Program-made: the position numbers and the translations under genes | The notes under the pieces: model-generated | Databases searched by the model: none | Told to the model about the DNA's origin: nothing | Seen by the model: the letters and a program-made list of their open reading frames with translations, nothing else | Assembly: GCA_965637545.1 (NCBI GenBank) | Contig: OZ281496.1 | Coordinates: forward strand, 2,790,001-2,854,000 | Source of the DNA: Phallusia mammillata | Lineage: Eukaryota | Length of the DNA: 64,000 nt | Direction of reading: 5' to 3' | Shown here: piece by piece, positions 1,961 to 53,015 of the stretch | Position numbering within the stretch: position 1 is the first letter of the stretch | Layout: each line of letters starts with the position of its first letter

Positions 1961-2049
1961 ACTGATGCGTTTCAATCAGTCAAAGTTTTGGGCCTACACG
2001 GGTTTTTGTTGCTAGACACTGCAAAAAACAATATTAAATATAACGGATG

Positions 2050-9754: not shown

Positions 9755-9825
9755 AGAGTTGCAAGTCGGGCCGGACTTTTCGGGCCGGGTTTGGGTTCGG
9801 GCCGGGTTCGGGCCTAAGCTTTCCA
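9755..9825. repeat. (CGGGCCGGGTT)-type GC-rich interspersed repeat end
   Basis: cagagttgcaagtcgggccggacttttcgggccgggtttgggttcgggccgggttcgggcctaag; related pieces near 1458-1495, 2945-2985 and 56585-56645. Confidence 0.55.
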
Positions 9826-10020
9826 TTGCATCAAATATTTACTGGGCTACTTCAAAAAAGCAAACAAACAACTTACATGAAGTAGTTGCCAAATGCAAGC
9901 GTGTGGCGTAAAAATCTTGCTTCTGTGCTGGCCAAACACAAAGTAGCAACCAGAAGAATAGACAGACACAGATTGTTCATGATGACAGTTAGCTTGTTGA
10001 AGTTGAAAACTCACTGTGCA

Positions 10021-10263
10021 CACTGTTTCGACCTATAAGGTTTTATCTGTGCAACTGGTGACAAAAGATAGGTCATGTTAGCTAGTATGATCATCCAACG
10101 GTACTCCAGTTTGCCACAACTGGGCATAAACCACAAAGGAAACTGGATCACAATGGCCAAGCAACTGCTTGGGAACTGAAGTGAAGTTGGCTCTGTGCCA
10201 TTGGATGGCTATACTATCTCTCGTCACCAGTTGCACAGATAAGACCTTATAGTTCGAAACAGT
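10021..10263. mobile_element. MITE-like element with about 50-bp terminal inverted repeats
   Basis: 10021-10071 (cactgtttcgacctataaggttttatctgtgcaactggtgacaaaagatag) is the near reverse complement of 10214-10263; non-coding interior. Confidence 0.7.
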
Positions 10264-10371
10264 TCATACTGTGTGCAGCTTGTTGTACCTTTATTTAATT
10301 GGGACCTTTCGACACGGACCTAAAAGTAAACCTGATAAAAACTCGTCGATATTTGCTTTGTGGGTATCGCA

Positions 10372-10777
10372 CTAATGACACCCCAAAGTCAGCGCAGTTT
10401 TCGATGCAGAAGCATGGCGTCTGTTAGCACCAACTTTTATTAGTAAACTAATAATCCAAAGTGTATTTTGTTGTGTACTTCGTTAAATGTACGACCTTGC
10501 AAATCTAAAAATGGTTACCAATCAGGCTTTATGCAGTCAACCATAAATACAGGCACAAAATAATTATCTCAACAGCGAGTTTTTGTCTACCAAGCTTGCA
10601 CAATTAACTATAGCTATAGACACAAATAACAAGACTAATAAGCTTTGCGCATTCATTCATAGATACAAGCGTAAAACACTTCTTTGACCCATAAGGCCGC
10701 TCTGAATGACCTGACAAGACAAAAGCAATAATAAACAGCCACTAACATGCTTTGGTCATTGCAGATAATTTCTTCAA
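10372..10777 (-). pseudogene. Cys-rich secreted peptide, subfamily 1, copy D
   Basis: Start mutated to TTG (10777-10775), in-frame TAG after KAC, exon 1 donor lost. Exon 2 from 10420 reads TPCFCIENCADFGVSL with a damaged donor. No exon 3. Confidence 0.75.
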
Positions 10778-11219
10778 ACTGTTTTTATGCGAATTCCCGG
10801 TTGATCAAATTCGCTGTCGCATTCTAAGCGATATGAACATTTATCATATCAGGGGCTTCAGCTTCGTAAGGGATATTTCAAGTCAAAAACTGCAAACACG
10901 CGAAAAACAACAACAATTGTTAGCAAAACTGAAACCTAAGCATTTTTGATTTCCACCAGTCGTTACTGATTTCCTGATTGCTTCGCACTGCTACATGTAA
11001 GGTTTAGTCTGTTTGATAATAAATCCACTACTAGCTACGGTTTGTAACGTAATTGGTTAAAACATGGTAAAATAGGTCTGACAACGTTTCACCTTAACTA
11101 CTATCATCTACAACTTCGCAATCATCACAGTTGTAAGAGATACATATTTTTTAGGTTAGTTTTGTGATTTAATTTCAACAAACACTCATATATAAATTAT
11201 TGTGCGCCAAGCCCGTTGA

Positions 11220-11520
11220 GCGCGTAATAGCTAATCAAGCCGGTGTCCCAAACATTCGCAATTGGCAGGGCACAAAGAAAAATCTATCCTGCGGTCGAAC
11301 TGGCGATCCCCAACTACGAAGCTGACATGTACGGTGTACAAGGCAGACAACGGTGCTTGTGATTCGACTTGCGGCGGTTTCTCCGCGGTGCCTGTGCAGC
11401 TCGGTTGGTAGAGCGCGAGTCCCGGCCAGACTCTTGTTGTAGGTTCGAATTCCAGTACAGGCCAGATGTTTCTAGTCCGTGCCTTGCCATATGGGAATGC
11501 TTGACGTGCCTTGCCATATG
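11220..11520. mobile_element. tRNA-derived palindromic element (degenerate copy)
   Basis: tRNA-like unit on + at about 11390-11460 (gcctgtgcagctcggttggtagagcgcgagtcccggccagactc...ggttcgaattcc...aggc) with its tail, and an inverted tail at 11220-11295. Same family as 53016-53376. Confidence 0.65.
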
Positions 11521-11619
11521 GGAATAATTCGGTATGGTACCCTCAATGGGTCTGACGTACTATGATTTACAAACGAGCATGCTATGATCGCTTGTCAGCA
11601 TGACCGCTTCAGGGTCGAC

Positions 11620-11778
11620 CCCAGTATGAATGTATTTATTTTGCAGCATACAAGGCAGGCAACGGTGCTTTTAAATCGACTTTTGGCGGGTTCACCACTG
11701 GCTCAGTTGGTCCATGAAAGACTCCTGGCGTGGGTTCGAATCCCACCCACGTGTCTTGTCATATGGGAAAGCCTGGCG
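11620..11778 (+). mobile_element. tRNA-derived element, right half
   Basis: ggctcagttgg...gggttcgaatcccacc followed by a tail ending gcctggcgtac. Confidence 0.55.
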
Positions 11779-12260
11779 TACCGTAAAGAGTAAAGTACCG
11801 TCAACTAAAATCATGGTGTGGAGCTGTTTTGTCATTTTTTTCCAAAGCCTAATAAATAATCAACAAATGTTCGTCACTGTTCACAAGATGACAAAACAAT
11901 GACAAAACGGTTCTGACACTATGGGAAGCAAAATGCTTGATAGGCTGAAATCACAAAATTTTATAGAAAGGCAAGCACAGCGATTGTTATGAACTTTATA
12001 ATTACTATTTTCCGAAATAAAAAAACTCAACATCTCAGAAGAAATTGTTGAATGTGAATATTTAGTATTTAAGTAGCTTCAATTTTCCTGGAATTTTGGG
12101 TCAATCGCAATCGATATGTACGACCTTGTTAGTTTGAAGCTGACAAGCTTTGTACAGTCAAGCATATACGTTGTTACTAGTACTACTTCGACCGCAAAAG
12201 AATGGTGTCCCAGCAAGATTTTTTTTATCTGCAAAGTATTAGCAGTTAACACAATTTAAC

Positions 12261-12347
12261 CTGTGCTGTAGCTGAATGACTTGACAAGACAAAGACAACA
12301 ATAAACAACATCAAACATGCTTTGGACATTACTGATGATTTCTTCAT
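12261..12347 (-). pseudogene. Cys-rich secreted peptide, subfamily 1, copy E (exon 1 only)
   Basis: 87-nt exon MKKSSVMSKACLMLFIVVFVLSSHSATAQ with GT donor and upstream module. Intron 1 homology ends near 12110; it has no exon 2 or 3 of its own. Confidence 0.7.
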
Positions 12348-13284
12348 ACTGCTTTCTTTGCAGATTCTTGGTTGATCAACTCTCTGTCGGCTTCTAAACG
12401 ATATGAACATTTCCCATATGGGCGCTGCAGCAAAACAGATATATTATTGCAAAAACTGCAAACACGCGTAAAACAACAACATTTGATATCAAAAATGAAA
12501 CCTAAGCATTTCTGACTTCCTCCAGTTGCAGATAATTTCTTTATACGGATGCGATTTTTTGCAGGTTTTTAGTTGATCAGTTGGCATTCGCCTTCTGAAC
12601 GATACGAACATTTCCCATATGCGCAAAACGGGTTGGCTTTTTAATGAATGGGATATCCGGTCATTTGTAGCAGGTTGCAAAACTGCAAACAGACCAATCA
12701 AATAAATTGATGTCAAAACAGAAACCTGCTTGATTTGTAACAATAGCCGCATCACACTGAAAATATCACCGTTTTTGCCATATAATAACAGATAAACTGT
12801 GTTTTGCCTTTTCATCATTTATCAAACGCAATGTCGTTAATTTAGTGGCCCAAAAGCAATTGCACATTTAAAGCGTTCATTAAGTGCAAATGTCGCTGTT
12901 ACAGATTTCTATGGTTTGTTTCTTGTACTGTAAGTGTATCAGCAAGACAAAAAAGTTCGTCACTGGTCACAGATAGACTGCCGAGGTTATAAAGAATGTG
13001 CCAAACGGTTTGGCCACTATGCAAAGCTAAAGACTTCTTAAGCTGAAATCAATTTGAAGAAAAGCAAGTGATTGTTACAAAATATCTAAATTGCTATTTT
13101 CCGAAATAAAAGCAACTAACAACCCATGCAACTAATGCAATTGTGTCGCTATGTTTTCTTTCACCAAGCGAAATAAACTTAACCTAGCTCAGCTCAACTC
13201 AGTTACTCTGATACCTAAAAAATAATCATTTCCACCAACAAATTTCCTTTATTGCTGCTTTAGTGCATATTTTATTTGTTGGTT

Positions 13285-13751
13285 CTATTTGGTGTTTGTT
13301 TGCTCTTGATCTTTGGAACCGCAGAGCCCTCGGGCTTTACAGGTCAGGCAGTTTTGGGCCACTAGAAAAACATTTTTGTTAGAAAAACTAATGATCCAAT
13401 GTTTTTTTAAATGTACGACTTTACACACCTAAAGCATATTTCCTAACAAACTTCATGTTGACAACCATGACTACGGGCACGAATTTACCAGCCAAAAAGC
13501 AGGTTTCCTAACGAGCTTTGTGGAGTCAAACACGGTGCTTGTTATATGCACAACCTTGTAAGCTCCTTACAAGATTCGTACGGTCCGGCATATACGCTGC
13601 TATAAGCACTACTTGCCTGCAAAAGAGTAATGTATCTGCAAAGTAGCAGTTATCACAATTGTACCTGCGCTGTAGCTGAATGACTTGACAAGACAAAGAC
13701 AACAATTAACAACATCAAACATGCTTTGTACATTACTGATGATTTCTTCAT
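13285..13751 (-). pseudogene. Cys-rich secreted peptide, subfamily 1, copy F (exon 2 deleted)
   Basis: Exon 1 13751-13665 MKKSSVMYKACLMLLIVVFVLSSHSATAQ and exon 3 13361-13285 (x)AQNCLTCKARGLCGSKDQEQTNTK* are intact. Intron 1 joins the end of intron 2 directly, so phase 0 to phase 1 splicing gives ...AQWPKTA*. Confidence 0.75.
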
Positions 13752-14847
13752 ACTATTTTCTGAGCAGATGCCTGGTTAATCAAATCGTTACCGCCTTCTA
13801 AACGATATGAACATTTCCCATTTGAGCACAAGGGATATCTTTAGTCAAAAACTGCAAACACGCGAAAAACAACAACAGTTGATATCAAAAATTAAACCTA
13901 AGCATTTCTGACTTCCTCCAGTTGTAAGTGATAGCTTCATAGCTACATGTTTCCACATGTAAGGTCCTGTCTATTTGATAGTAATTTAACTACTAGCAGC
14001 GAATTGTAAATTCTACGGCTAAAACATGTAAATATGCCGGACAAATTATCACCTTAACTACCTCAATGACTTTTACGATGTGATAACTTAAATTGTTATC
14101 CTTGCTTACAAAGTTGAAAAATGTTGGTACAGCGTACAGCTACAGTGAAACTTACCACATATTATAGTTACTACTCGCATGTGGGTATAGTCGTGCAAAG
14201 AATAAGCAGTAACGTCAACAGCACGAAATTCATTAGAATATCCGTTTTAGGCTTGCAAAGTCGTGCACGCAAAAACTGTACAATCCTTAGCTGTATAGTA
14301 AAAACCTACCGTGTTCCACACCCATATTACATGGCTATGAATACTAAATACAGCCCTATTTACTTCTGTAGTCTTAAAGTGTATGGTAGCATTAAGGGTT
14401 GCACTAAATATCGCATGGTACCACACCGTTCTTCTTAATGTACCACCCTTACCCTATAAAAACCTACAATCTAACCAGGGCAAAAGCTGTCCGATTTGAA
14501 ATGACAATAACAGTATCAAGTAAGTTTTGATCGTTGAAGGTGATTACCAATTGTTTAAACCAGATTGCATTTAGTCTAGGTAGAATAGTCAGTACATTAC
14601 TATCTTTACATGGTGTAAACATTTCCCGTGTGTGCAAAACAAGAATAGACTAAACCTTTCATGTGGGAACGTGCAGCTATGAATCCATCACTTACGACTG
14701 GAGGAAGTCAAAATGCTTAGATTTCATTTTTGATGATAATCGTTGTTTTTCGCGTGTTTGCAGTTTTTTGTTCAAAGACATATGGGAAATGTTTGTATCG
14801 ATAGAAGCCGACAGAGCTGATCAACCAAGAATCTGCACAGAAACATT

Positions 14848-15487: not shown

Positions 15488-15660
15488 AACCAACAAATAA
15501 AACTTGTGTTTTGGTGTAACAAAATTCACAGTTCACTGTTTTCGGTTCGTAGAAATCAGAGTGGTTAAGTTACGGAATTATTTCAGCAGATTTGGGAATT
15601 CGAACAGATCTTTCAGGGGGCGACAAAACAATATACTTCATTCTTGCTGTAGTGCTGTAA

Positions 15661-15869: not shown

Positions 15870-17610
15870 GTAATTTCTTAGTGACTCTATATACTACGCT
15901 GTATGTTTGAAATGAATGACGACGCAGGATTAAAGATCTTGAGAAAGTCGTTTACGGAAGTAATAAACGTGATTCTACTGAAAAAGCAGTCTGCTGTATG
16001 ATTTCTATACTTGAGGCTGTTAACACATAGATGGCATCAGGTTGTATGTATTGAAATATTGAAAAAAAGTTTCAAATGTTTGCGAAACAATTTAAAACGC
16101 AACAAGCTAAAGGACCATTAAATAAAATTAAATCAAATTCATAATGCATTAAAAGTGTTTTTGTTTGTTTTGTTCAAACAACAAAACAATACGCCCCTAG
16201 GATTTCAGGTTGTACACAAAAGATAAGTTTCCGTTTATTGTTTTGATTTACAGCAAATCACAATAGTATTTCAATAGAATTAGGAATTCATTTTCTTGTG
16301 GATCGATTTGGTCGCCCCCAGAGTTTGTAGACAGGGCCAGACCAGGTGTAGCAGAATCCACGCCTTCTGCAGAATATGCACAACCATTTTCCTGTACAAT
16401 ACAATAATGTGCAAGATAGTCGGAAAAAAGACTGACACAAAAATCGATCATCTGTTCAAAATATGAAAAAAGGGAAATAAGTAAAATCACGAAAAACTGA
16501 AGAAATTTTTGTCCATCAGACAAAAAATCAAACCAACATAAGACTAAGAAAACAAGTGCAGTTACACACATATTAACTTACTACAAAAAGAGAAACATAG
16601 AATACAAAAACAACACAAACAAAAAAGGGGCAGAAAGCACACTGACAGGCCAACGCCATAGCAACAGAAATAAAACATGCAAATTTAAGAAAAATGTATG
16701 AGAACACAAAACCTGACAAGCAATACGGTTCTCTTTACCAAATATTGATAAGTTGGTGGAGCAATTACGGCGACAATACCTTTTGCAATACCAAGGTCTT
16801 CTTGCCTAAAAAACACATTTTCAGTGCTGTATACTACTGTATACAATCGCATTAATAACTTATTAAAAAAACTGTACAACTACATTTTTAACATAAAGAC
16901 AAAAACAACAACTTACCATTGTAACACTTACACACAGAAATAACAGAAACAGGACAACCAGTTTCATTGCTTCTTTCCTATTACGTCTTTGTACTTACTA
17001 TAGTGTATAGATCTTGCTGGATCTTTATAATATATACAAACATCTTAATAGCATCGTATACGGAAGTCTTGAACGTGAACCTACTCATTTCATTCACTAA
17101 AAATCGTGCACGATAAAACATGTGACAAAATCAAGTGTGGGCTACGATTTCTATACGTGTCGCTTTTTTCGATTTCTATGGAATGATTTGTGCATGTACA
17201 TTACTTTCGCAATTCAGGTTATTAAAAGTCTAGTACTTGGTGTATGAAATGTCGGATGGAATAACTCAAAAATATTAAATTGTTGAAAACGTTCAAAGCT
17301 AATGGAGTAATTGGAACACTTACCAACAGATTTTAATTTCAGTTTTCAAATGGTAAAAGTCATTAAGTTAAGATGAAAAATTGTCAGGCCTGTTTACAAT
17401 GTTTTAACCGTAATAGTTACAATTCGTTGCTAGTAGTGAATTTACTATCAAATAGACTAAACCTTACATGTGGAAAAATGTTGCTATAAAGCTATCACTG
17501 ACGACTGGAGGAAGTTAGAAATGCTTAGGTTTCATTTTTGATATCAATTGTTGTTGTATTTCGCGTGTTTGCAGTTTTTCCCTCACATAAGAAATGTTCT
17601 TATCGTAAGG
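15870..17610 (+). repeat. Segmental duplication block, direct copy of about 46520-48320
   Basis: Near-identical sequence throughout, covering a subfamily 2 gene and a subfamily 1 upstream module. Homology breaks at about 17608. Confidence 0.85.
16288..16967 (-). CDS. Cationic Cys-rich secreted peptide, subfamily 2, copy K (73 aa; putative antimicrobial)
   Basis: Exons 16967-16917, 16805-16739, 16391-16288, GT-AG, phases 0 and 1. Product MKLVVLFLLFLCVSVTMARRPWYCKRYCRRNCSTNLSIFGKWLCIFCRRRGFCYTWSGPVYKLWGRPNRSTRK*. After the signal: 11 R + 4 K, no D/E, 4 W. TATA-like tattataaaag about 60 nt upstream. Confidence 0.88.
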
Positions 17611-21300: not shown

Positions 21301-24300
21301 AGGAGGAGTCAAAAAATGCTTCACAAACATAACACATCTTACAATTATGTTAAGCAAACGTTATTTAATGTACGATTGCGCTGTCTAGAAGTACAACACA
21401 CTTTGGTGTAAAAAATACCTACGTACCCACGCGCCAATTTCGCATTTATTACTTGTACTATTTTCCCCGTTCGAAATGCAGTAAACGTCAGAGTTTATGG
21501 AACACACCACATACGTATAAATGGCAGATTTCGTTAAATTTGCTTTTTGATGAGTTTTTCTACTCCACAAAAAGCATGATACATTTTCATTCATCAGCTT
21601 TTTCAAACCATATAGGCTATTATTTGACATTTGAAGTTACTTACATTAAAATGTCAAGAGGGCAAATGCGCCCTCCTTGTCGACACGTCCCGACGCAAAA
21701 AAACAAAACAGGAAAATTCAACGCAAAGTGCAATTTTGAGTTTCTTGCCATACTCAGTTTTGCAATGTGTTTCGTTGCAGCGTTAAGTTTTCACTATGCT
21801 AATGCTGGTGTGTTTTCGTTTATCCATGATTTTCAAACAACACTTTACCATTTGCCACTTTAGCAGTTACAACAAAAACTCGATAGAAAACGACCACAAT
21901 GGATATGCAGACAACAATTCTAGAGACAACAACTGTTTCAACAGGTAATTCTAAAAGCAAATCATTATCACTAACATATTTAATGATTTGTTTCTTCAAA
22001 TACAATTTAAATAAGTAACTGACAAACAAAACAGTTCTAAATAATACATATTAAACGAATAACGTCTAAAAAACTATTTAAAACAATCGCATAAGATACA
22101 CAACTAACAGTTCTACATACTTCCAGCAAGAATATACAAACCGATATCTGAATCTAAAGCAAATCGTCTATCTACAATTACCTAACGTTTTATCACCGAA
22201 TAATTGCTTTATAACGTCGCTTGCCACTTACTTTTTGTTGTGTGTCATCAAGTTACGTCCCTCATGGGGCATTCATTTTTTTATTTAATTGACGCTAACA
22301 ATATAAACCTTGAATACGTTGCAATGTTTTACATTCAGATGTTGCCTTGTGTCTTTTTGTTGAAAATTCGTATACTTAATACCGGAAGTGGTAAAACTCA
22401 AAACATTGTTTTCCATTTTGCTTTCTAACCAACATTCAAACGTTCATTTTTTGAGATGTACCTGAGTTGAACGATCAAGCAGCTATCTTGAACCCTGCAA
22501 GTGCAGAAGACTTGGAATCGATTGAAAGTTTACTGCTGAACAGAGCAAGAAAAATAAAACCTGGAGATAAAATCGAAGAAAATCATGACAACTCCCAATT
22601 ATGCATAGAACTAGTCAACCAAAATAAAAGTGAATACAATTCAAACCTACAACTTGGATCAACTCACATCGACTTCACCTTACAAACATACGAGACAAGA
22701 CGTCTCGTGGTTGCAGTGTCTGTCTTCAAGATAAACACAACAGTAACCGCACAGACTGAAACCGCCGAATCCGGTTCTCTCGCCACAACGCAGTACATAG
22801 CTACCTTGAACACAACCTACATCGCTATAGTTGGTTGGAACGCGGATACGTTCCTGAACTCACGTCGCAAACGATCATCTACCGATCAAGTAACCGATCA
22901 ACTTCCTGGAAATGTAACTTTCATTGGACCCCCAACGCCTCCAAAGATTTTCTGCACGGAAATCATAGCCCAAAAGAAACACGAGCCAAACCTGATGATC
23001 AACAAACTGGAACCAATCTGTCTCTTCTTCGATAGAGTTAAAAAGAAGTACTCAAATCGTGGTTGCGAAACAATTACTGATGACGTAACAGGCAACGTCA
23101 CTTGCAAGTGCAACCATCTCACTCTTTTCACCGTTCTACTTGCGGTCCAATCCACCAAAATACCAAACAGCGTCAAGGTAAACATTCAGCCGAATAGTTT
23201 AACTAACAGACAATAACAAGCCATAAATATTTGTTTTTAGATTACATCTTACACCACTGAATCAGCATCCATCATGTTTCTGGTCGCCACCATAATAATC
23301 CTCTACAAGTCGAAACACAGCGGAGATCGGGTTCCCGTTCAAATCAGCTTGTCTTTGGCTCTGCTGCTTTTCCACGTCATCAACATATCACATGATCTTG
23401 CCGTCTTAAATGAGGTTACTTGTGTGATGGTGACAGCTGTCAATCAGTATCTGTTGCTGTCGTTAGGTGATTAGAAAACTAAGTCATTTTAGGCATTAAA
23501 AATTTGTCAATGGCGCTACGCGTAAATATCGACTGAACAAAACTCGACAAAGCAGCTAATTTGAGATAACCCTGTGGTATTCAACGCAATGTTTGTTTCA
23601 GGCATGTGGTTACTGGTGGAAGGAATTCGACTCTTCATGGCGACTTCGTTTCCAGTTAAGTTCCGAACTCAGGAATCATCGAAACGTCTAAAAATCTTTT
23701 TGGTGATGGGTTGGATCGTTCCCGCTTTTATAGTGGGAATATCTATGGCTGCGGGATTATCCCTTGGTATCTACATGAAGAACCAACCAATGTATGAGCA
23801 ATGTAACGAGTTTATTCCGATTCTCAAGTACGACAGATGCTGGTTGACACCTGGTACTCCGATCTTTTACACAACGGTGGTCGCTCCTCTTGCTCTCGTC
23901 CTTCTCATCAACTTCGGGATTGTCCTGAAAACAACACATGTGATGTTGAATTCGAAAAAGATGCGGAACAGAGGAGAAGATCCAGGCACAGGAGATGCGT
24001 TGAGAGCAGCAAAGTCTTTTTTCCTACTGTTTCTGATGCTCGGTGGAACTTGGGCTTTGGCTTTCTTTACAGGTGAGTTTGTCCACACACATATACATTT
24101 TAGGAGTTAGATTAATTACTTTAGCTGGTGATTTGAATTTAATAAACCTATATCGTATTTTTCAGGAATCGGGGACGAGATTTCGAACGAGGTGTTCATG
24201 TACATGCACAGCTTGGTGAACGGTTTGCAGGGAGTCGTCGTCTTTCTGCTGTACTGCGTCATGGATGACGACACCAGACAGGAAATCCTGTTGCGCATGT

Positions 24301-42797: not shown

Positions 42798-45584
42798 AAT
42801 TATAGCTGAGGTCAAAGTTTAAACCAAGAAGGGGGTGAAAGTTCAAACAAGTAGTTTTCTTTGATGTCTTCATTGTTTTGGTTATTTTTATTCTCTCTGT
42901 ATTTGTAGTTATCTGAATTTAGTATTTTTAAACAACGATGTTGCTTGTAAACCAATTTTGACATTAGTGTTGTTTCTAGAATAATTCGTTGCATTTAGTT
43001 CGAGGTAAGCTCTTAAAAAGTCATTCAACGAAGCCTCGTGCATGAGCTATGAACCAAACCAAAATCTTTGTTTGATACTTGCAAGAGCAAATAGTAACTA
43101 CGTAAGCACTGTTTTCTCTTCTGTTCAAAAAGAACTTAGAAAGTCCACAGAACCACTTCCATTTCTTGCGTAACTTTTCCTCTAACCAAGCAAAACATGT
43201 CGCTATTGATAGAACCAGTCTCAATTCGATCATATTAACTCTTTCGAAACTTTCAAACACGGGTGTGACACGCTATACACGCGATATTTTGCTTTGTTGG
43301 AAAAAGTAGGGATAAAATGGCAGTGGTTTTGTGGACTTTTATACTTCTTTATGCAGTACTCAGTTCTTTTTACCAAGGCTTTTGTGTAATGAACCACTGG
43401 TGATGTTATAAGCCACCATTTTAACACTGTAGTGGTATAATTTCTTATTTTTCTATTTTCTCTGGCGTGTACAGTTGCATGCATTTTGAGCTGCTATTTC
43501 ATGGTAATTGTTGACGAGTTGATTCGCAGTTAATGACAAAACATTTCTAGTTCCTCTTGTCCGCCTGTTCAGCGGCTTCAGTATACGTAACATTTTTTGG
43601 AATTCGTTGACAATAGTACAGGAATGATTCTTGTATGCGTTGTTTGTATCGTGTTGATAAGCTAAGTGTGAACATTGCATTAACATCATGCAAAATGTTA
43701 TTCAACTCTACTAACAGTTGTAACACAATCCCTTTTTTTTTGCTTTACATAGCTGTCCCTTCCTTGCCAGTTTGGAGTGGAAGTTTTGATACAATATCAT
43801 TGTTTCGTGCCAGCCAGAGTTCTTCCTGTGTCGAAAACCAACTAGTTTTGATTAGGAGAAACACTACAATGTGTACAGTGGCATTTGAGGTTACCCCCGA
43901 AAAGGTTGAAAACGCAAACACTAACTTTAGATATGGCATCTTTTTTTCCCAACAAACTGACTAATTCATCACGTGTGGGAACAAAACAACAAACCAGCAC
44001 ACGATTAAACAGACCAATCCAATCCCCAAAACGCTATTGTAAGTCAAAATCCAACGATATGAGACACATGGCTAACAATTTACTGAACCATTAAGGCGTA
44101 CATTTACCACTATACCCAGTTTAAGTCTCAAAATTGTAAAAATACCACCGCACGACAGCCACGTCCCAATACCACCGCACGGTGAACTATACTACGTTAA
44201 ATATTACAAACGCGACGGTTGGCGACAAACGCGAATAATCGAAAAATAGTTTGAATCTCGTCAAAACATCTTCAGCTTCAGTTTTCGACGAATGGATTTT
44301 GCTAAAAAACGGAGTGAGTATTATGAAATACGAAGCACCGAATGTGTTAAAAAACGAAAAAAGACGTGGTTTCCAACACAACGACAGCAGACAGTGGCAA
44401 GGACAAATGTTAACGAACTTTACCTTACAGCCCAAAATGTGGTAAAAAATATAATATATAAACTGACACCAGGTGACGCACGCGGTCAACGAAGTATTCA
44501 GGTATCATGTGAAGAGGTCTGTGGGTAGATGTTTAAACAGTCTTGTTGTCAATAAATAGTGCTTTTGGATTTATTTCGTCTCCCACAATCATTAATTATG
44601 AAAACCCATAACTTTCAAGAAATCGAAGAGCAGTTATATCCAAATTTTCTATGAGCAAATCAATTTTAATCAAAATAATCGTGTTTTTGTTAAGTGGCAA
44701 GTTATGGTGTCACATGTGACAAATCTTCGTAGTTGTTGGGTTGTTGCATATTACACCACAGTATCAACTTTCGGTTGCCAACACAATAATCCTATAGAGG
44801 TTCAATTCTAAGGGTACACTTAATTGTAGGAAAAAGTGGTACAAAGGAAAAACATTAAATTCTATACTTATTTTGTAAAAGTTGTTCGTACTGTTCTGTT
44901 GCAGAAAATAGCATTTTATCTATTCCTACTGAAACAAAGCTATAACAACAGCTGATTTCCTCTCAAACATGTTCGCACGATTTCCGTTAAAGCTTCGTGA
45001 AAAATAGCTTGTTTTGCCCTTACAGGAAATGTTCGAACCATGTAAAAGCTGGCAGTGCATTGACCATCATACCTAGACCAAATTCTATCTCGTTTAAACA
45101 ACTATGTAATGAAAACACATTAACATGACGAAATCACCATCAACATTCAAACTTACAAATTGGGATTACAGAACTAAATGGTCCTTTTTTATAGTATTCA
45201 TAGCTTTGCAATATGGGTGTCGAATAGGGTTGGTTTTCACTAAACAACCAAGGATTGTGCAGTTTTTGCGTGCACGACTTTGCACTCCTAAAACGGATTT
45301 CCTATCGAATTTCGTGCTGCAGCCTTTCGTGCTTATTCCATGCACGACCATATCCGCATGCGAGTAGTAACTATAATAAGTGATAAGTTTCACTGTAGCT
45401 GTGCCAACATTTTTCAACTTTGTAAGCAAGGATAACAATTTAGGTTACCAGATGGCATAAGTCATTGAGGTAGTTAAAATAATAATTTTCCAGACTTATT
45501 TTACGATTGTTTGACCATAGAAGTTACAATTCGTTGCCAGTAGTGAATAAACCAAACCTTACATGTAAAAACAGCTATGAAGCT

Positions 45585-45773
45585 ATCACTAACGACTGGA
45601 GGCAGTCAGAAATGCATTGGTTTCGTTTTTTCACGGGAATTGTTGATGTTTTTCGCGTGTGTGCAGATATGAATAAAGATATCATTTTCGCTAAAGCCCC
45701 CATATGGGAAATGTTCATATCGTTTAGAAGCCGACAGAGAGTTGATCAACCAAGAATCTGCAAAGAAAATAGT
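45585..45773 (+). promoter_or_regulatory. Conserved upstream module of subfamily 1 genes (representative copy)
   Basis: Core gactggaggaagtcagaaatgcttaggtttcatttttgatatcaattgttgttg...cgcgtgtttgcagtttt...atgggaaatgttcatatcgtttagaagccgacag precedes exon 1 of B, C, D, E, F, G, H, I and J. Orphan copies occur near 5100, 7090, 7340 and 17510. Regulatory role is inferred only. Confidence 0.5.
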
Positions 45774-46331
45774 ATGAAGAAATCATCAGTAATGTCCAAA
45801 GCATGCTTGATGTTGTTTATTGTTGCCTTTGTCTTGCCAAGTTATTCAGCTACAGCACAGGTATAGTTGTGTTAACTGCTAATACTTTGGAGATACATAA
45901 CTTTTGCTGGGACACCAGTCTTTTGTGGTCTTAGTGCTAGTAACCCTGTGCTTGACTGTACGATGTATGTAATGAAACCCGCTTCAAGCTTTCAATGTCG
46001 TGCATGTAACAAAACACACGACAAAACTGGATACGGGACTATTGATACACTGGATTGGACACTGGATTATTAATTTCTTGATTAAAGTTGGTGTTTATAA
46101 TGTGTTTACAGACAAACTGCTATTGCGCAGAGAATTGCGCTGACTTTGGATTGACACCAAGTAAGCAAATTTCTTAACCACGAAACACTATTTTACTTTT
46201 TAAAATTTTGGGTTTTGATCATCCATTAAATTCAAAATTGTTCATTTTTTGCAGTGTTTAGCAACTGTCTAATGTGTAAAGCTCAAGGGCGTTGCGGTCC
46301 TCAAGATGAAAAGCAAACAAACACAAAATAA
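45774..46331 (+). CDS. Cys-rich secreted peptide, subfamily 1, copy H (intact, 70 aa)
   Basis: Exons 45774-45860, 46112-46160, 46255-46331. Product MKKSSVMSKACLMLFIVAFVLPSYSATAQTNCYCAENCADFGLTPMFSNCLMCKAQGRCGPQDEKQTNTK*; AATAAA a few nt after the stop. Confidence 0.88.
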
Positions 46332-46519
46332 AACCAATAAATAAAATGTGTTTTGGGTGTAATAAAACACAGATGACTGTTTACAGTTTGTAGAAATAAA
46401 AGTATGCTAAATGTCAGGGTGGATGAGTTACAGAATTATTGCAGCAGATTTGGGAATTCTGCTAAAAGATCTTTCAAGTGGCGACAAAACAATAGGCTTC
46501 ATTCGTGCTGTAAGTAATA

Positions 46520-48320
46520 TCTTAGTGACTGTATATACTCCGCTGTATGTATGAAATGAATGACAACGCAGGGGCAAAGATCTTGAGAAAGTCGTTTACG
46601 GAAGTGTTAAACGTGATTATACTAATTTTGTCCATAAAAGACAAAAAAAACTTGTTGAAAAACAATTTGCTGTATGATTTCTATACTTGAGGCTGTTAAC
46701 GCATAGATGGCACCAGGTTATATGTAATGAAATATTGAAAAAAGTTTGAAATGTTTGCGAAACAATTGAAAACGCATTAAGCTAAATTAAATGAAATTAA
46801 ATAAAATTCATAATGCAATAAAAGTGTTTTTTTTTGCTCGTCTGTTTAGTTAAAACAACACAACAGTGCACCCCTAGCATTTCAGGTTGTACACAAAAGA
46901 TAAGTTTCCGTTTATTGTTTTGGTTTACAGCTAATCACAATAGTATTTCAATGTAATTAGGAATTCATTTTCCTTTCAATCGATTTGGTCGTCCCCAGGG
47001 TTTGTAGACAGGGCCAGACCAGGTGTAGCAGAATCCACGCCTTCTGCAGAATATGCACAACCATTTTCCTGTACAATACAATAATGTGCAAGATAGTCGG
47101 AAAAAAGACTGACACAAAATCGATCATCTGTTCAAAATATGAAAAAAGAGAAATAAGTAAAATCACGAAAAACTGAAGAAATTTTTGCCCATCAGACAAA
47201 AAATCAAACCAACATAAGACTAAGAAAACAAGTGCAGTTACACACATATTAACTTACTACAAAAAGAGAAACATAGAATACAAAAACAACACAAACAAAA
47301 AAGGGGCAGAAAGTACACTGATAGGACAACGCCATAGCAACAGAAATAAAACATGCAAATTTAAGTAAAATGTATGGGAACACAAAACCTGACAAGCAAT
47401 ACGGTTCTATTTACCAAATATTGACAAGTTGGTGGAGCAATTACGGCGACAATACCTTTTGCAATACCAAGGTCTTCTTGCCTAAAAATCACATTTTCAA
47501 TGCTGTATACTACTGTATACAATCGCATTAATAACTTATTAAAAAAAAACTGTACAACTACATTTTTAACATAAAGACAAAAACAACAACTTACCATTGT
47601 AACACTTACACACAGAAATAACAGAAACAGGACAACCAGTTTCATTGCTTCTTTCCTATTACGTCTTTGTACTTACTATAGTGTGTAGATCTTGCAGGAT
47701 CTTTATAATATATACAAACATCTTAATAGCATCGTATACGGAAGTCTTAAACGTGAACCTACTCATTTCATTCACTAAAAATCGTGCACGATAAAACATG
47801 TGACAATCAAGTGTGAGCTATGATTTCTATACATGTCGCTTTTTTCGATTTCTATAGAATGATTTGTGCATGTACATTACTTTCGCAATTCAGGTTATTA
47901 AAAGTCTAGTACTTGGTGTATGAAATGTCGGATGGAATAACTCAAAAAATGTTAAATTGTTCAAAACGTTCAAAGCTGCTGGAGTAATTGGAACACTTAC
48001 CAACAGTTTTCAACTTTGTAGGCAAGGATAGCAATTTCAGTTATCAAATGGTAAAAGTCATTAAGTTAAAATGAAAATTTGTCAGGCATGTTTACAATGT
48101 TTTACGAGTTACAATTCGTTGCTAGTAGTGAATTCACTATCAAATAGACTAAACCTTACATGTGGAAACATGTTGCTATGAAGCAATCACTGACGACTGG
48201 AGGAAGGCAGAAATGCTTAGGTTTCGTTTTTGATATCAATTGTTGTTGTATTTCGCGTGTTTGGAATTTTTTCTATCAAGATATCCCTTATGCTAGAGCC
48301 CTCACATAAGAAATGTTCTT
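46520..48320 (+). repeat. Segmental duplication block, direct copy of about 15870-17610
   Basis: Near-identical sequence; here the module continues into exon 1 of copy I. Confidence 0.85.
46965..47645 (-). CDS. Cationic Cys-rich secreted peptide, subfamily 2, copy L (73 aa)
   Basis: Exons 47645-47595, 47481-47415, 47068-46965. Product MKLVVLFLLFLCVSVTMARRPWYCKRYCRRNCSTNLSIFGKWLCIFCRRRGFCYTWSGPVYKPWGRPNRLKGK*. Confidence 0.88.
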
Positions 48321-48376
48321 GTCGTATAAAGGCCAACAGCGAATTTGATTAACAAGGAATTTGCAAAGAAAACATT

Positions 48377-48451
48377 ATGCAGAAATCCAAAATATGTTTG
48401 ATGTTGTTTATTGTTGCCTTTGTCTTGACAAGTCAGTCAGCTACAGCAAAA
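48377..48451 (+). pseudogene. Cys-rich secreted peptide, subfamily 1, copy I (exon 1 only)
   Basis: 75-nt exon MQKSKICLMLFIVAFVLTSQSATAK (12-nt in-frame loss) with a phase-0 GT donor; intron 1 is truncated after about 40 nt. Confidence 0.65.
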
Positions 48452-49410
48452 GTAATATTGTGTTAACTGCTAATACTTTGCAGATGCGTGGACAAAAAAA
48501 GGTTAAGAACCGCTGCTTTAAAGCTTCGTGAAAAAATAGCTTGTTTTGCCCTTACAGGAACTGTTCGAACCATGTAAAAGCTGGCAGTGCACTGACCATT
48601 ATACCTAGACTTAAATGCAATCTGGCTTAAACAACAAGTAATGAAAACGCATTAACATGACGAAATCACCATCAACGGTCGAAACCTACTGAATGTTCTC
48701 ATATCTAGTCAAACAGCTTTTGCACTGATAAGAATGTATTTTTTTTCTGTAGGGCATTTATTACCAACCGTAATATTACCACACACATTGGGATTACAGA
48801 ACTAAATAGTCCTTTTTTACAGTATTCATAGCTATACAATATGGGTGTGGAACACGGTTGGTTTTTACTAACAACTAAGGATTGTAAAGTTTTGCGTGCA
48901 CGACTTTGCAAGCCGAAAACGGATTTCCTAGCGAATTTCGTGCTGCAGACTGCTTACATTCCGTACACGACTATATCCACACGCGAGTAGTGACCATAAT
49001 ATGTTGTAAACTGCACTGCGTTGTACTCTGTGTCAACATTTTTCAACTTTGTAAGCAAGGATAGCAATTTAAGTTACACATGGTAAAAGTCATTAGTTAA
49101 GGTGAAAATTTCTCGGGCATATTTGCAATGTTTTTCCGCAAAGTTACAATTCGTTGCTATGCAGTGAAATTATGTATCAAATAGACTAAACCTCACATGT
49201 GGAAACATGTTGCTATGAAGCTATCACTAACGACTGGAGGAAGTCAGAAATGCTTTGGTTTCATTTTTGATATCAATTGTTGTTGTTTTTCGCGTTTTTG
49301 CAGTTTTGTTTAAAGACATCCGTTTTGCGAAAGCCCCCATATGGGAAATGTTCATATCGTTTAGAAGCCGACAGAGAGTTGATTAACCAATAATCTGCAA
49401 AGAAAATAGT

Positions 49411-50214
49411 ATGAAGAAATCATCTGCAATGACCAAAGCTTGTTTGATGTTGTTTATTGCTGCTTTTGTCTTGTCAAGTCATTCAGCTACAGCACAGGTA
49501 AAGTTGTGTGAACTGCTAACACTTTGGAGATACATACACCAGTCTTTTGTGGTCTTAGTGCTAGTAACCCTATGCTTGACTGTACAAAGCATGTAAGGAA
49601 ACCCGCTTTAAGCTTTCAATGTCGTGCATGTAATAAGCGCTATGGTTGACTGCACGAAGTATGTATAAGGAAAACCGCATTAAGCTTTTAAGTCGTGTAT
49701 GTAACAAGCGCTATATGGTTGACTGCACGAAGCTTATTAGGAAACCCGCTTGCAAAGTCATGCATGTAACAAGCGCTATGGTTGACAGCACAAAGCTCGT
49801 TAGGAAACCTGCTTTTTGGCTGGTAAATTCCTACGCGTAGTCATGGTTAACTGCATGACGTTTGTTAGGAAATCTGCTTTAGGTGTGCAAAGTCGTACAT
49901 TTAACGAAACACACGACAAAACTGGACACGGGAGTATTGATACACTGGATTGGACACTGGATTATTAATGTTTTGATTAAATTTGGTGTTTATATTCTGT
50001 TTACAGACAAACTGCTATTGCGCTGACTTTGGATTGACACCAAGTAAGCAAATTTCTTAACCACGAAACACTATTTTACTTTTTAAAATTTTGGGTTTTG
50101 ATCATCCGTTAAATTCAAAATTGTTCATTTTTTGCAGTGTTTAGCAACTGTCTAATGTGTAAAGCTCAAGGGCGTTGCGGTCCTCAAGATGAAAAGCAAA
50201 CAAACACAAAATAA
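49411..50214 (+). CDS. Cys-rich secreted peptide, subfamily 1, copy J (66 aa, five Cys in the mature region)
   Basis: Exons 49411-49497, 50007-50043, 50138-50214. Product MKKSSAMTKACLMLFIAAFVLSSHSATAQTNCYCADFGLTPMFSNCLMCKAQGRCGPQDEKQTNTK*; a 12-nt in-frame deletion removes AENC. Confidence 0.8.
49575..49885 (+). repeat. Degenerate minisatellite (about 60-70-bp unit, about 5 copies) in intron 1 of copy J
   Basis: Repeated tggttgactgcacgaagc..gttaggaaacccgc core; copy number differs among paralogues (about 1 in H). Confidence 0.7.
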
Positions 50215-50569
50215 AACCAATAAATAAAATGTGTTTTGGGTGTAATAAAACACAGATGACTGTTTACAGTTTGTAGAAATAAAAGTATGCTAAATGTCAG
50301 GGTGGATGAGTTACAGAATTATTGCAGCAGATTTGGGAATTCTGCTAAAAGATCTTTCAAGTGGCGACAAAACAATAGGCTTCATTCGTGCTGTAAGTAA
50401 TATCTTAGTGACTCTATATACTACGCTGCATGCATAAATGAATGACAACGCAGGGGTAAAGATCTTGAGAAAGTCGTTTACGAAAGTAATAAACGTTATT
50501 CTACTATTTTTTTCATAAAAAACAAAAAAACTTGTTGAAAAACGATAGATTTACTAAGACCATAACTTA

Positions 50570-50845
50570 CGGTAGACCCAGATCAAGCTATTTTTGATAA
50601 GTGGCGCAAAAAAGCTGAATTATTATTTTGTGGCAAAAGAGGCGGTCGGGTTGGGAAGTCAGTTTTTGAAAATTTGTCAGCAGTAACTAAGTTTTATTGC
50701 CAGTTTCATTGAATTTTAAATGCTAATACCTTACCCCGACCCTAATTGCCCTAACCGTGAGCATTTTAGTAGATATAACGTTTTGAATGGGTTAAAAGTG
50801 CTCTTTGCGCCACCTATTAAAAATGAGCAAAATGTGGGTCCACCG
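50570..50845. mobile_element. MITE, same family as 63545-63815
   Basis: Inverted ends tttttgataagtggcgcaaa / tttgcgccacctattaaaaa. Confidence 0.65.
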
Positions 50846-51089
50846 TGATGTATGGTGTTAGTAGATTTTCTTCGAAAAAACAGTCTGTAGCAATTTTATG
50901 CTTAAGGCTCTTAACATATCGATGACATCAGGTTATATGTATTAAAATATTAAAAATATTTTCAAATGTTTGTGAAATAATTTAAAGCGCAGCAAGCTAA
51001 ATGACCATTGGGCAAAATTTAAACAAATTAATAATGTTTTAAAAGCGTTTTTGTCCTTTTAAACACACCTAACTAAACGTGATATTAAT

Positions 51090-51316
51090 GCCAGCCCCAT
51101 TAATGGCGTAAAACCGAGTCAAGCCGGTCTTCCAAGCATTCCTATATGGCGAGGCACAGACTAGAAAAAATCTACTCGAACATACGACAGGAGACTTTCC
51201 GGGACTCGCGCTCTACCAACTGAGCTACACCGGCTCAGTGGAGAATCACAAGCACCGTTGCCTGCTTTTCATGCTGCACATGTCAGCTTCGTAGTAGGGG
51301 ATCGCTAGTTCGACCA
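51090..51316 (-). mobile_element. tRNA-derived element, partial
   Basis: Minus strand reads gccggtgtagctcagttggtagagcgcgagtcccggaaagtctcctgtcgtatgttcgag followed by the family tail; the spacer matches 11300-11365. Confidence 0.65.
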
Positions 51317-51925
51317 TTTTTCATTATCAAAGGACTGTTCTCAGAAATGAGAATGTAATTTAAAAATGTTACAACAATCCGTTCTCCAGTGATTTGCATG
51401 GCAGTGCAACTAAGTATAAAAAAGGTTTCTAGTTGGTTCTTTCTTTAGCACATATTCTTCTGTGATAGCTGTTGAGGATTTAAAACGAAACGTTCTTGTG
51501 GCAAAAACTCTATTAAAGAAAAAAAAAAAAAAACACCAACAGCAATAAAAAAAACTTGAAATATGCAAAACAACAATAAAGAAATCTCTCTTTTTGAACA
51601 ATGGTGTTGTAACAGCATGGTTTATTTTCTATCGTTTGGGATGGGGTTGAAATTAATTAAATTTTAATTAATTAAAGAGCCTAAATGCTACATATAACTT
51701 AGTGCTATCGAAATTATGGTAATCCCATGCGTAAAAATCATGTTTCAAGTCATGTTTTCGATACGTTTAGCGTTTTTTTTTTTTTTTTTTGTTGTGATAA
51801 ATTAGTACATTCACGTTTATTGTTTCGGCGAATGACTCTAAAAGCTGTTTACGATCAAGACATTATTCATTGCAAACGTACTGTTGAAAGGGACGCTTGT
51901 ACATTACTTCAGGAATATAGAAATA

Positions 51926-52707
51926 ATGAAGCCTATTGTTTTACTTCTGTTACTTTTGTGTGTGAGTATGACAATGGTAAGTTGTTGTTTTTTTGTTGTA
52001 GCCAAATCACCAATTATGATTGTACTTTAAAATAAAAAATAACACTTTTTGCAGGCAAATAGACCATGGTATTGCAAACGCTATTGTCGACGCTATTGCT
52101 CCAGCAACACTTACTCATTTGGTAAATATAACTGTTTTTACTATCCGTTTGTTTTTGTGTTTGTCCTTGTATTTTATCTTTCGATTGTCAACCTGCAAAA
52201 TGGTGTATTTTGAAGATTTTTTGTTTGTTTCTGAAACATCAATATATCCTGTTTTGTGGGCTGTTTATTTTATTAAAAGTTTTGTGATAATTGTTTTAAT
52301 TATATTTTTGTTAATTAAGATTGTTTGTTTTTGCTTATCTGCAATTTGTCTGTTTGTCATTACTATTGTCTTTCTAACTGTCCATTTACATGCCATTAAT
52401 AATAATAATGTTTTAAAAGCGATTGTTTGCTTGTGCTTCCTTTCGAATTTTTGCGTTGTCATTAAATTGTTATTTCGACCATACATGTGTGTATATTCAC
52501 CAGTCTTATTGTTTTGTTTGTTGTTTGTTTTTCGCACAATTTTGCGTGTCATTTTTTCTATTCATATACCAGCTTATACCATATTATTTTTGTTGTACAG
52601 GTAAAATACTGTGCACATTTTGTAAGAGGCACAGATTCTGCTACACATATTCCGGTTCTGTCTTCACGGCGAGAAGAAGACGCATCAAGCCCACGAAAAG
52701 AGGATAA
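51926..52707 (+). CDS. Cationic Cys-rich secreted peptide, subfamily 2, copy M (74 aa)
   Basis: Exons 51926-51976, 52055-52121, 52601-52707. Product MKPIVLLLLLLCVSMTMANRPWYCKRYCRRYCSSNTYSFGKILCTFCKRHRFCYTYSGSVFTARRRRIKPTKRG*; 11 R + 5 K, no D/E, terminal Gly. Confidence 0.88.
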
Positions 52708-53015
52708 ACAGCATTCGGATAACGTCACCTTACTTGTGTAATCTGCCATAATATACAGAGTTTTGCATTTGTGTTATACACAAAAAAACAACAACAATAA
52801 AACTTGTGCTGTTGTTTGAGTAAAACAGAATGAAATAAAATAGAAATAAATAAAAACTGAAAACAAGCAGTGTAACAGCTTAAATTGCTTCATCAATATA
52901 AACACGCAAATCCGTTGGCATGCCGTGAAAAACCACCCCGAAACTTGGCACGTGTGCCAGGGGTTGCCCGCGATTTAGACCAGCGATCACGACAGACCTA
53001 TATATACACATCAAA

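What the first reader, a model, noticed from the sequence alone, without database searches (positions are those of the whole stretch)
51926..52707. Subfamily 2 copy M: divergent paralogue with Arg-rich tail and terminal Gly
Seen: the same exon 1-2 sizes (51 and 67 nt) and all six Cys, with RPWYCKRYCRR conserved but the rest diverged (tail VFTARRRRIKPTKRG*). It lies on the opposite strand and has a longer intron 2. Established: a C-terminal Gly is the substrate for PAM amidation, and the tail has dibasic sites. Inference: an amidated or tail-processed product; conservation of the N-terminal motif across diverged copies points to selection on the coding sequence.
Basis: partly seen in the sequence, partly recalled or inferred. 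Interest (0 to 1): 0.7.

Follow-up and report, generated by a model that had tools for sequence, protein, structure and literature searches.

The report
Divergent sea-squirt cationic six-cysteine peptide gene
This is an intact three-exon gene for a small, secreted, very positively charged six-cysteine peptide that selection has kept and that looks like a host-defence peptide. Its expression, activity and the proposed amidated end could not be shown here.

Summary
At 51926-52707 (+) there is a three-exon gene (51/67/107 nt, GT..AG introns) for a 74-residue precursor: signal peptide, then a peptide of about 56 residues with net charge +16, no acidic residue and six Cys.

Its only relatives in the 240-Mb genome are copies K and L in this window. 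All three share the same Cys spacing, 3,3,11,2,5. This scan has already followed up copy K, on another stretch of this window.

Against K/L, synonymous sites are near saturation (dS about 1.3-1.7) while dN is about 0.22-0.26. That gives omega of about 0.15-0.18 (Fisher p = 2e-8). Exons are 64-78% identical; introns and flanks are at the level of shuffled sequence. Neutral simulation keeps the reading frame in under 0.3% of trials. Selection on the coding sequence is therefore supported.

The amidation or tail-processing idea remains untested. The terminal Gly lies in the fastest-evolving part, and K has no Gly at its end, although L ends in Gly-Lys. Three small probable-RNA runs showed no transcript, which is not decisive.

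Pfam, PDB sequences and a word search of 5.8 billion protein clusters gave nothing. The closest known kind is the ascidian turgencins, by layout only and not by sequence.

The parts
51797..51866 (+). Upstream block shared with K, L and the broken M-type 5' ends. It includes the invariant 10-mer TTCACGTTTA at 51810-51819, about 116 nt before the ATG. Candidate shared promoter element.
   Evidence: Alignments; position. A regulatory role is inferred only.
51926..51976 (+). Exon 1 (51 nt): 17 codons of a signal peptide with an MK start and a long Leu-rich core. A is at -3 of the ATG.
   Evidence: It is 75% identical to L exon 1. Cleavage after Ala18 (T-M-A) is inferred from the -3/-1 rule; no predictor was run.
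51977..52054 (+). Intron 1 (78 nt, phase 0, GTAAGT...TTTTTGCAG).
52055..52121 (+). Exon 2 (67 nt): start of the mature peptide, the motif RPWYCKRYCRR, and Cys 1-3 spaced C-x3-C-x3-C.
   Evidence: It is 78% identical to L exon 2, z = 9.3.
52122..52600 (+). Intron 2 (479 nt, phase 1, inside a Gly codon in the loop between Cys 3 and Cys 4; GTAAAT...TTGTACAG).
   Evidence: Identity to L intron 2 is at shuffle level.
52601..52707 (+). Exon 3 (107 nt including TAA): Cys 4-6 spaced C-x2-C-x5-C, the conserved FCYT.SG stretch, and the basic tail.
52660..52704 (+). Divergent C-terminal tail of 15 codons (VFTARRRRIKPTKRG). It holds a tetra-Arg site encoded by (AGA)3+CGC, a Lys-Arg pair and the terminal Gly.
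   Evidence: Read directly. Tail divergence. Processing and amidation are inferred, not shown.
52796..52801 (+). First AATAAA after the stop (89 nt downstream); three more at 52834-52854. A dispersed repeat begins at about 52850.
46965..47645 (-). Paralogue L (exons 47645-47595, 47481-47415, 47068-46965). It ends ...LKGK.
16288..16967 (-). Paralogue K (exons 16967-16917, 16805-16739, 16391-16288). It ends ...STRK.
46486..46502 (-). Broken M-type 5' end: an M-like upstream region plus the first 17 nt of the M-type coding sequence, then the end of a dispersed repeat. Two more are at 50369-50385 (-) and 15625-15641 (-).

Best explanation
Copy M is a functional, selectively maintained gene. According to earlier notes of this scan the genome is that of a sea squirt.

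Shown:
- The gene encodes a 74-residue precursor with an N-terminal signal peptide, directly followed by a peptide of about 56 residues with no acidic pro-region.
- That peptide has net charge +16 and no Asp or Glu. It has six Tyr, four Phe and one Trp.
- Its six Cys are spaced 3,3,11,2,5, the same as in K and L.

Inferred:
- The peptide folds into a small disulfide-stapled unit. The first half is an amphipathic helix in which a four-residue Tyr-Cys-basic-basic repeat puts the three Cys on one face. The second half is a helix or strand carrying the other three Cys.
- It is released from secretory or blood cells as a host-defence peptide that binds and disrupts polyanionic microbial surfaces.
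- M is the Tyr-rich, longer-tailed sister of the Trp-rich K and L, and the only intact member of its own sub-lineage.
- Its basic tail is probably part of the active peptide. The terminal Gly could be converted to a C-terminal Arg-amide. The RRRR site could instead let a furin-type convertase cut the tail off. Neither step is shown.
For: - Gene model and splice signals.
- Family limited to K, L and M in the whole 240-Mb genome.
- Purifying selection: omega 0.15-0.18 with dS 1.3-1.7. Fisher p = 2e-8 overall and 6e-5 for the core, and conservation confined to exons.
- Neutral simulation keeps the ORF in under 0.3% of trials, and keeps ORF plus splice sites plus Cys in 0 of 20,000.
- Charge, composition and identical Cys spacing.
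- Helical hydrophobic moments of 0.62-0.63 for the two Cys-bearing segments, and Cys 1-3 within an 80-degree arc of an ideal helix.
- Shared upstream block with K/L.
- AATAAA after the stop.
- Ascidian six-Cys cationic peptides of comparable layout are antibacterial and amidated: turgencins, PMC7024374.
- The genome holds Cu2_monooxygen-domain genes and proprotein-convertase P-domain genes.
Against: - No transcript was found. Three probable-RNA contig sets have zero cover on both M and L. They are small (about 33 M letters each) and their tissue or stage is not on record here, so a gene expressed in one tissue could easily be absent from them.
- M lacks the TATATA box that the broken M-type copies carry about 35-40 nt before the ATG.
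- No family, structure or homologue supports any function.
- No fold could be predicted, because the mature peptide spans two exons and the joined model was not to be submitted.
- Cys 6 does not fall on the same helical face as Cys 4 and 5.
- The terminal Gly is not conserved in K.
Confidence: 0.55

Rival explanations
1. M is a recently silenced or dying copy. The reading frame is still intact, but the gene is no longer expressed. The low omega then reflects past constraint, or constraint on the K/L side only.
For: No cover in the RNA-like runs. The TATA-like box of the M-type relics is deleted in M. Three other M-type copies are already destroyed. M is bracketed by high-copy repeats.
Against: After divergence that saturates synonymous sites, all of the following are intact: the ATG, both GT..AG introns, the intron phases, the six Cys, the stop and an AATAAA. 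A DNA-like run of the same species has the locus with 3 differences and no gaps in 1046 nt. L, whose sister copy K is 93% identical at the DNA level, is equally uncovered in those RNA runs, so their silence says nothing specific about M.
Confidence: 0.13
2. The peptide is not antimicrobial but structural or adhesive. It would be a Tyr/Cys/Arg-rich secreted peptide whose Tyr is oxidised to DOPA and which cross-links tunic or wound material, as in small cationic mussel foot proteins and DOPA-bearing ascidian blood-cell peptides. This comparison is from my own knowledge and was not tested.
For: The mature peptide has 6 Tyr, 6 Cys and 16 Lys+Arg in 56-57 residues. The genome has a large expansion of copper monooxygenase domains (57 matches), although these are not tyrosinases.
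Against: K and L replace several of these Tyr with Trp, which does not fit a DOPA-based role. No repeat or Gly-rich adhesive motifs are present. No similarity to any adhesive protein family.
Confidence: 0.1
3. The peptide is a signalling ligand: a hormone, chemokine-like or recognition peptide. It might act on the adhesion-type receptors encoded between K and L. The tail would be processed at RRRR and KR-G into a core peptide plus a short amidated fragment.
For: Three tandem genes with a GPS motif and a secretin-type 7TM lie between K and L. M has a tetrabasic site and a C-terminal Gly, which is typical hormone-precursor grammar. Convertase genes are present.
Against: The processing sites are absent from K and L. 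The conserved part is the Cys core, not the tail. A net charge of +16 with no acidic residue is unusual for a receptor ligand. Gene adjacency alone is weak evidence.
Confidence: 0.07
4. The peptide is a metal-binding or redox peptide related in function to the vanadium-binding vanabins of vanadium-accumulating ascidians.
For: It is basic and Cys-rich, with Cys spaced two to five residues apart within each half. By my own knowledge this is the vanabin style.
Against: It has six Cys, not 18. The exon pieces match no Pfam family of that kind at E <= 10. Searching the two exon pieces against all PDB chain sequences gave no significant match.
Confidence: 0.04

Closest known systems
Turgencins A and B (antibacterial peptides of the colonial ascidian Synoicum turgens; PMC7024374)
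   Same: Both are ascidian, secreted-type and cationic. Both have six non-adjacent Cys in two groups of three, with C-x3-C at the start and C-x2-C in the second group, and the first Cys at about position 7. Turgencins are C-terminally amidated, and M ends in Gly, the amidation substrate. Both are proposed or shown to be helix-loop-helix-like.
   Different: Cys spacing is 3,4,7-8,2,3 in turgencins against 3,3,11,2,5 in M. The turgencin motifs CXMAC and KKXGG are absent. Lining up turgencin B (sequence) on the Cys by eye, I find essentially no shared non-Cys residues. M is 20 residues longer, is Arg/Tyr-rich rather than Lys-rich, and has far higher charge (+16). Turgencin genes are unknown, so gene structure cannot be compared. 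Kinship is not supported; only the layout is alike.
Copies K and L of this window
   Same: Same three-exon plan, 51- and 67-nt exons, intron phases 0 and 1, and Cys spacing. The 11-residue motif is identical. The core is 71% identical. An upstream block is shared.
   Different: M is on the other strand. It has a different start (MKPIVL against MKLVVL) and one Trp instead of four, with six Tyr instead of four. The tail is unrelated, one residue longer, and carries RRRR and a terminal Gly. Intron 2 is longer and intron 1 shorter. dS is about 1.3-1.7, so the split is old.
Four-exon cationic six-Cys peptide gene elsewhere on the same chromosome
   Same: It is cationic, with Cys 1-3 and Cys 4-6 on successive exons, a phase-1 intron in the Cys3-Cys4 loop, and C-x2-C in the second half.
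   Different: Spacing is 4,4,10,2,4. It has a pro-region ending in a KRRNKR-type site and one more exon. Neither M exon finds it in the six-frame genome search at E <= 10.

Membership tests
Turgencins | Six non-adjacent Cys in a cationic peptide of an ascidian | tested here: met
   One search gives Cys at 7, 11, 15, 27, 30, 36 of the mature peptide, net charge +16. The ascidian origin rests on earlier notes of the scan and was not verified by me.
Turgencins | Cys spacing 3,4,7-8,2,3 and the shared motifs CXMAC and KKXGG (PMC7024374) | tested here: not met
   Spacing is 3,3,11,2,5. Both motifs are absent from the translated model.
Turgencins | Detectable sequence similarity outside the Cys | tested here: not met
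   I lined up the turgencin B sequence printed on the Cys by eye. Only the Leu before Cys 4 coincides. No tool comparison was run, because the mature M peptide spans two exons.
Turgencins | Disulfide pattern C1-C6, C2-C5, C3-C4 | not testable with these tools
   Needs native or refolded peptide with NMR or MS mapping. A fold of the joined model was left out.
Turgencins | Amidated C-terminus and antibacterial activity | not testable with these tools
   The terminal Gly is present. The chemistry and the activity need the peptide itself.
Substrate of peptidylglycine alpha-amidating monooxygenase | Entry into the secretory pathway and a free C-terminal Gly | tested here: met
   A signal-peptide-like exon 1 and GGA-TAA at 52702-52707.
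Substrate of peptidylglycine alpha-amidating monooxygenase | The enzyme is present in the organism and the Gly is conserved among paralogues | tested here: inconclusive
   There are 57 Cu2_monooxygen-domain matches and NHL repeats, but I did not single out the amidating enzyme. L has Gly-Lys at its end and K has no Gly.
Furin / proprotein-convertase substrate | R-X-K/R-R site in a secreted precursor, and convertases present | tested here: met
   RRRR at 52672-52683. P_proprotein domains at four or more loci. Actual cleavage was not tested, and the site is absent from K and L.
Vanabins (vanadium-binding proteins) | About 18 Cys in a four-helix, nine-disulfide domain, with a Pfam model match | tested here: not met
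   Six Cys. No such Pfam hit for the exon pieces at E <= 10. No significant PDB sequence match.
Defensin-type families (CS-alpha-beta, beta-defensin, big defensin, macins) | Their Cys frameworks and Pfam models | tested here: not met
   No Pfam hit. There is no CXC or CC element, and the 3,3,11,2,5 spacing fits none of them (compared from my own knowledge of the frameworks).

The most novel reading that the evidence does not exclude
K, L and M, perhaps together with the four-exon gene at C3 28.79 Mb, may be the first gene-level view of a tunicate-wide class of turgencin-type peptides. These would be disulfide-laddered, helix-loop-helix host-defence peptides with Cys 1-3 and Cys 4-6 on separate exons split by a phase-1 intron in the loop. 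Their C-terminal tails would evolve fast and switch between amidated ends (M, L) and non-amidated ends (K). M would be an old, functionally distinct Tyr-rich form.
Probability: 0.15. Interest if true: 0.6.

Novelty: new variant of a known kind. Interest (0 to 1): 0.4.

Why it matters
Only a handful of cysteine-rich defence peptides are known from tunicates, the closest invertebrate relatives of vertebrates. For the best-studied ones, the turgencins, the authors state that the genes are unknown (PMC7024374).

A small, apparently unannotated, selectively maintained family of extremely cationic six-Cys peptides gives three things. It offers candidate new antimicrobial scaffolds. It offers a natural comparison of Trp-rich (K, L) against Tyr-rich (M) forms, and of tails with and without an amidation signal. 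It also shows that such short multi-exon genes escape protein databases.

For M alone the gain is modest. It shows that the family is old and that the Cys core, not the tail, is what selection keeps.

Tried and rejected
- Pfam on the exon pieces of M and K gave only a chance-level GlgS hit (E 0.14-0.21).
- PDB sequence search with exon 3 gave nothing. With exon 2 it gave only chance hits to the receptor BCMA (TNFRSF17) at E 6-8.
- The word search of 5.8 billion protein clusters, using the stop-free frame around exon 2 so that proteins of 31-98 aa were eligible, found no candidate sharing three words. It sees only close relatives of that half.
- The ESM Atlas with exon 3 gave no usable hit.
- A 22- or 34-residue exon would need more than about 54 bits to reach significance, so a blank would mean nothing.
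- RNA evidence: the one runs search and the one read-laying run found only repeats covered in the three RNA-like runs.
- I tried to find the amidating enzyme by looking for Cu2_monooxygen and NHL matches close together. None were, and I dropped it.
Only K, L and M are recognisable. The recurrent Cys-containing stretches at 1.5-14 kb and 45-50 kb looked like non-coding repeats to me. I did not pursue this, and it is not a test of that other finding.
- I considered a protamine-like reading (Arg/Cys/Tyr-rich) and rejected it because of the clear signal peptide.
- This covers homologue search, encoding-contig look-up in transcriptome assemblies, AlphaFold and fold search.

Full report
**1. What is in the sequence**

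On the + strand an ATG at 51926, with A at -3, opens a 51-nt exon. It encodes a typical signal peptide: MK, a long Leu-rich core, then a small-residue end. The exon is followed by GTAAGT.

A 78-nt intron ends in TTTTTGCAG. A 67-nt exon (52055-52121) follows, then GTAAAT, a 479-nt intron ending in TTGTACAG, and a 107-nt exon ending in TAA at 52705-52707. The intron phases are 0 and 1.

The joined frame is open for 74 codons. An AATAAA lies 89 nt after the stop.

**2. Relatives**

Six-frame searches of the whole 240-Mb assembly with exon 2 and with exon 3 find only three loci, all in this window. They are M, K (16288-16967, -) and L (46965-47645, -). A DNA search finds no further copy.

K and L are 93% identical over 1.6 kb. 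They differ in four residues, all in the tail. All three share:
- the 51- and 67-nt exons and the intron phases;
- the Cys spacing 3,3,11,2,5;
- the 11-residue motif RPWYCKRYCRR.

M differs in several ways. It is on the other strand. It starts MKPIVL rather than MKLVVL. It has one Trp and six Tyr where K and L have four and four. Its tail is unrelated and one residue longer. Intron 2 is longer and intron 1 shorter.

The Cys core (residues 18-58) is 29/41 identical and the tail 3/16. 'The rest diverged' therefore holds only for the tail.

**3. Selection**

The table gives the Nei-Gojobori estimates for M against K.

| Region | dN | dS | omega |
|---|---|---|---|
| All codons | 0.26 | 1.70 | 0.15 |
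| Cys core | 0.22 | 1.31 | 0.17 |
| Signal peptide | 0.155 | 1.40 | 0.11 |

- In the tail, synonymous sites are saturated and pN is 0.40.
- Synonymous against non-synonymous counts differ with Fisher p = 2e-8 overall and 6e-5 for the core.
- Exons are 64-78% identical to L (z 5-9 over shuffles). Introns and 200-nt flanks are 52-55% identical, barely above shuffled sequence.
- Inside the invariant motif, four of eleven codons differ synonymously (read). The identity is therefore not a recent gene conversion.
- I simulated neutral substitution at 0.4-0.85 per site. The ORF survives in at most 0.24% of trials. The ORF plus splice dinucleotides plus six Cys survive in none of 20,000.

M has therefore been kept as a coding gene for most of its history.

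**4. History of the locus**

M's upstream 140 nt and its first 17 coding nucleotides recur three times on the - strand. The ATGs are at 46502, 50385 and 15641. Two of these lie just downstream of L and K.

In all three the homology stops at the same point, in codon 6. There a 58-nt sequence begins that has dozens of copies across the genome, so it is the end of a dispersed repeat. No M-type exon 2 or 3 follows.

An M-type gene therefore once sat behind the K/L-type gene. It was broken once and then copied along with its neighbour. M is the only intact member of its sub-lineage.

M itself is bracketed by high-copy repeats, at 51079-51476 and from about 52850. These may explain its inverted position.

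A block about 70-135 nt before the ATG is shared by M, the relics, K and L. It includes the invariant TTCACGTTTA at 51810-51819. I read it as a shared promoter element, by inference only. M lacks the TATATA that the relics carry nearer the ATG.

**5. The product**

By the -3/-1 rule, cleavage after T-M-A leaves 56 residues. I ran no signal-peptide predictor. The product has:
- 16 Lys+Arg, one His, and no Asp or Glu;
- pI 10.6 and a mass of about 6.9 kDa.

The first half is a four-residue repeat, Tyr-Cys-basic-basic, three times over. On a helix this puts Cys 1-3 within an 80-degree arc and the charges on the other side. Its helical hydrophobic moment is 0.63.

A second amphipathic stretch (0.62) carries Cys 4-5. 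Cys 6 sits in a stretch with strand-like alternation and does not fall on the same helical face.

I infer a disulfide-stapled hairpin. This is not shown. That step is left out.

**6. Known families**

- Pfam matches nothing real in the exon pieces.
- PDB sequences give nothing significant.
- A word search of 5.8 billion protein clusters with the stop-free frame around exon 2 finds no candidate.
- The ESM Atlas gives no usable hit.
- Full-text searches found no paper describing such peptides in Phallusia or other ascidians.

The nearest known kind is the turgencins of Synoicum turgens. They are cationic and antibacterial, with six non-adjacent Cys and C1-C6/C2-C5/C3-C4 bridges. They are helix-loop-helix-like and amidated, and their genes are still unknown (PMC7024374).

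M shares that layout: C-x3-C at the start, C-x2-C in the second half, and the first Cys at about position 7. It does not share the spacing (3,4,7-8,2,3), the two turgencin motifs or any residue similarity. I therefore file it as 'works like', not 'member of'.

It also splits Cys 1-3 from Cys 4-6 with a phase-1 intron in the loop. Its spacing is 4,4,10,2,4, it has a pro-region, and it shows no detectable similarity to M.

**7. The tail and amidation**

A free C-terminal Gly on a secreted peptide is the substrate of the amidating enzyme; that is established biochemistry. Ascidians amidate Cys-rich peptides (PMC7024374, PMC13208793). The genome has copper-monooxygenase-domain genes and convertase genes. 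I did not single out the amidating enzyme.

Three points count against a conserved role:
- The tail is the fastest-evolving part. Omega is about 1 between K and L there.
- K ends ...STRK without Gly, although L ends ...LKGK, an amidation-type end.
- M's Arg run is an (AGA)3 repeat that slippage could make.

I put amidation at roughly one in three. Removal of the tail at RRRR is somewhat less likely.

**8. Expression**

The runs search found two DNA-like holders and a set of small runs of the same species that were only guessed to be RNA.

Three of the RNA-like runs, laid on 46900-52850, cover only repeats. Cover on both L and M is zero. The DNA-like run carries M on a 1370-nt contig with three differences and no gaps. 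Two of those differences lie upstream of the ATG.

The RNA-like sets are small (about 33 M letters each) and their tissue or stage is not on record here. Their silence is therefore not decisive. Expression remains the main gap.

**9. Organism**

Earlier notes of this scan call the genome a sea squirt, and one names Phallusia mammillata. I did not verify this independently. The genome size (240 Mb), eight large pieces and about 36% G+C do not contradict it.

**10. Verdict**

The selection inference is supported. Amidation and tail processing are open.

M is an old, intact, Tyr-rich paralogue in a small undescribed family of hyper-cationic six-Cys secreted peptides. The scan had already met this family as copy K. 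A host-defence function is the best reading, at about one in two. The rivals are a silent copy, a structural or adhesive peptide, a signalling ligand and a metal binder.

Noticed in passing
window 46486-46502, 50369-50385, 15625-15641 (- strand) with about 140 nt upstream of each: Three broken M-type gene heads. Each has an M-like promoter region plus the first 17 coding nucleotides. All are cut at the same point by the end of a dispersed repeat that has dozens of 58-nt copies genome-wide. Two of them sit just downstream of L and K.
   Followed up: partly
window 51810-51819; 47702-47785 (L) and 17024-17107 (K): An upstream block with the 10-mer TTCACGTTTA (TTCACGTTCA in K) about 110-116 nt before the ATG. 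It is shared by M, K, L and the broken copies even though the rest of the flanks is unalignable. It may be a common regulatory element.
   Followed up: partly
window 17637-44750 (+), for example 22467-23213 and 23574-24107: Three tandem copies (88-95% identical) of an adhesion-type receptor gene (GPS motif, then a secretin-family 7TM) lie exactly between the peptide genes K and L.
   Followed up: partly
window 49304-49493 and 50138-50240: One 346-nt contig of the RNA-like run X4 joins these two stretches, with 53 letters between them that did not lay. This could be a spliced transcript or a structural variant of the repeat-rich region between L and M.
   Followed up: no
window 46965-46979 (L) and 16288-16302 (K), - strand: The four residue differences between the 93%-identical K and L all lie in the tail, three of them in the last four codons. 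They give L an amidation-type Gly-Lys end and K none. The tail evolves at omega of about 1 while the core has no replacement.
   Followed up: partly
window 49487-49884, 50681-50879, 51079-51476, 52850 onward: Very high-copy dispersed repeats, with summed contig depth 1e5-4e5 in the DNA-like run against a few hundred around them. They bracket gene M and are also the only parts covered in the RNA-like runs.
   Followed up: no
window 1500-14500 and 45100-49650: A repeat unit of about 300-800 nt occurs about ten times in both orientations. It contains Cys-rich open stretches such as ...EEIICND..VVYCC.C.. flanked by AG and GT.
   Followed up: no
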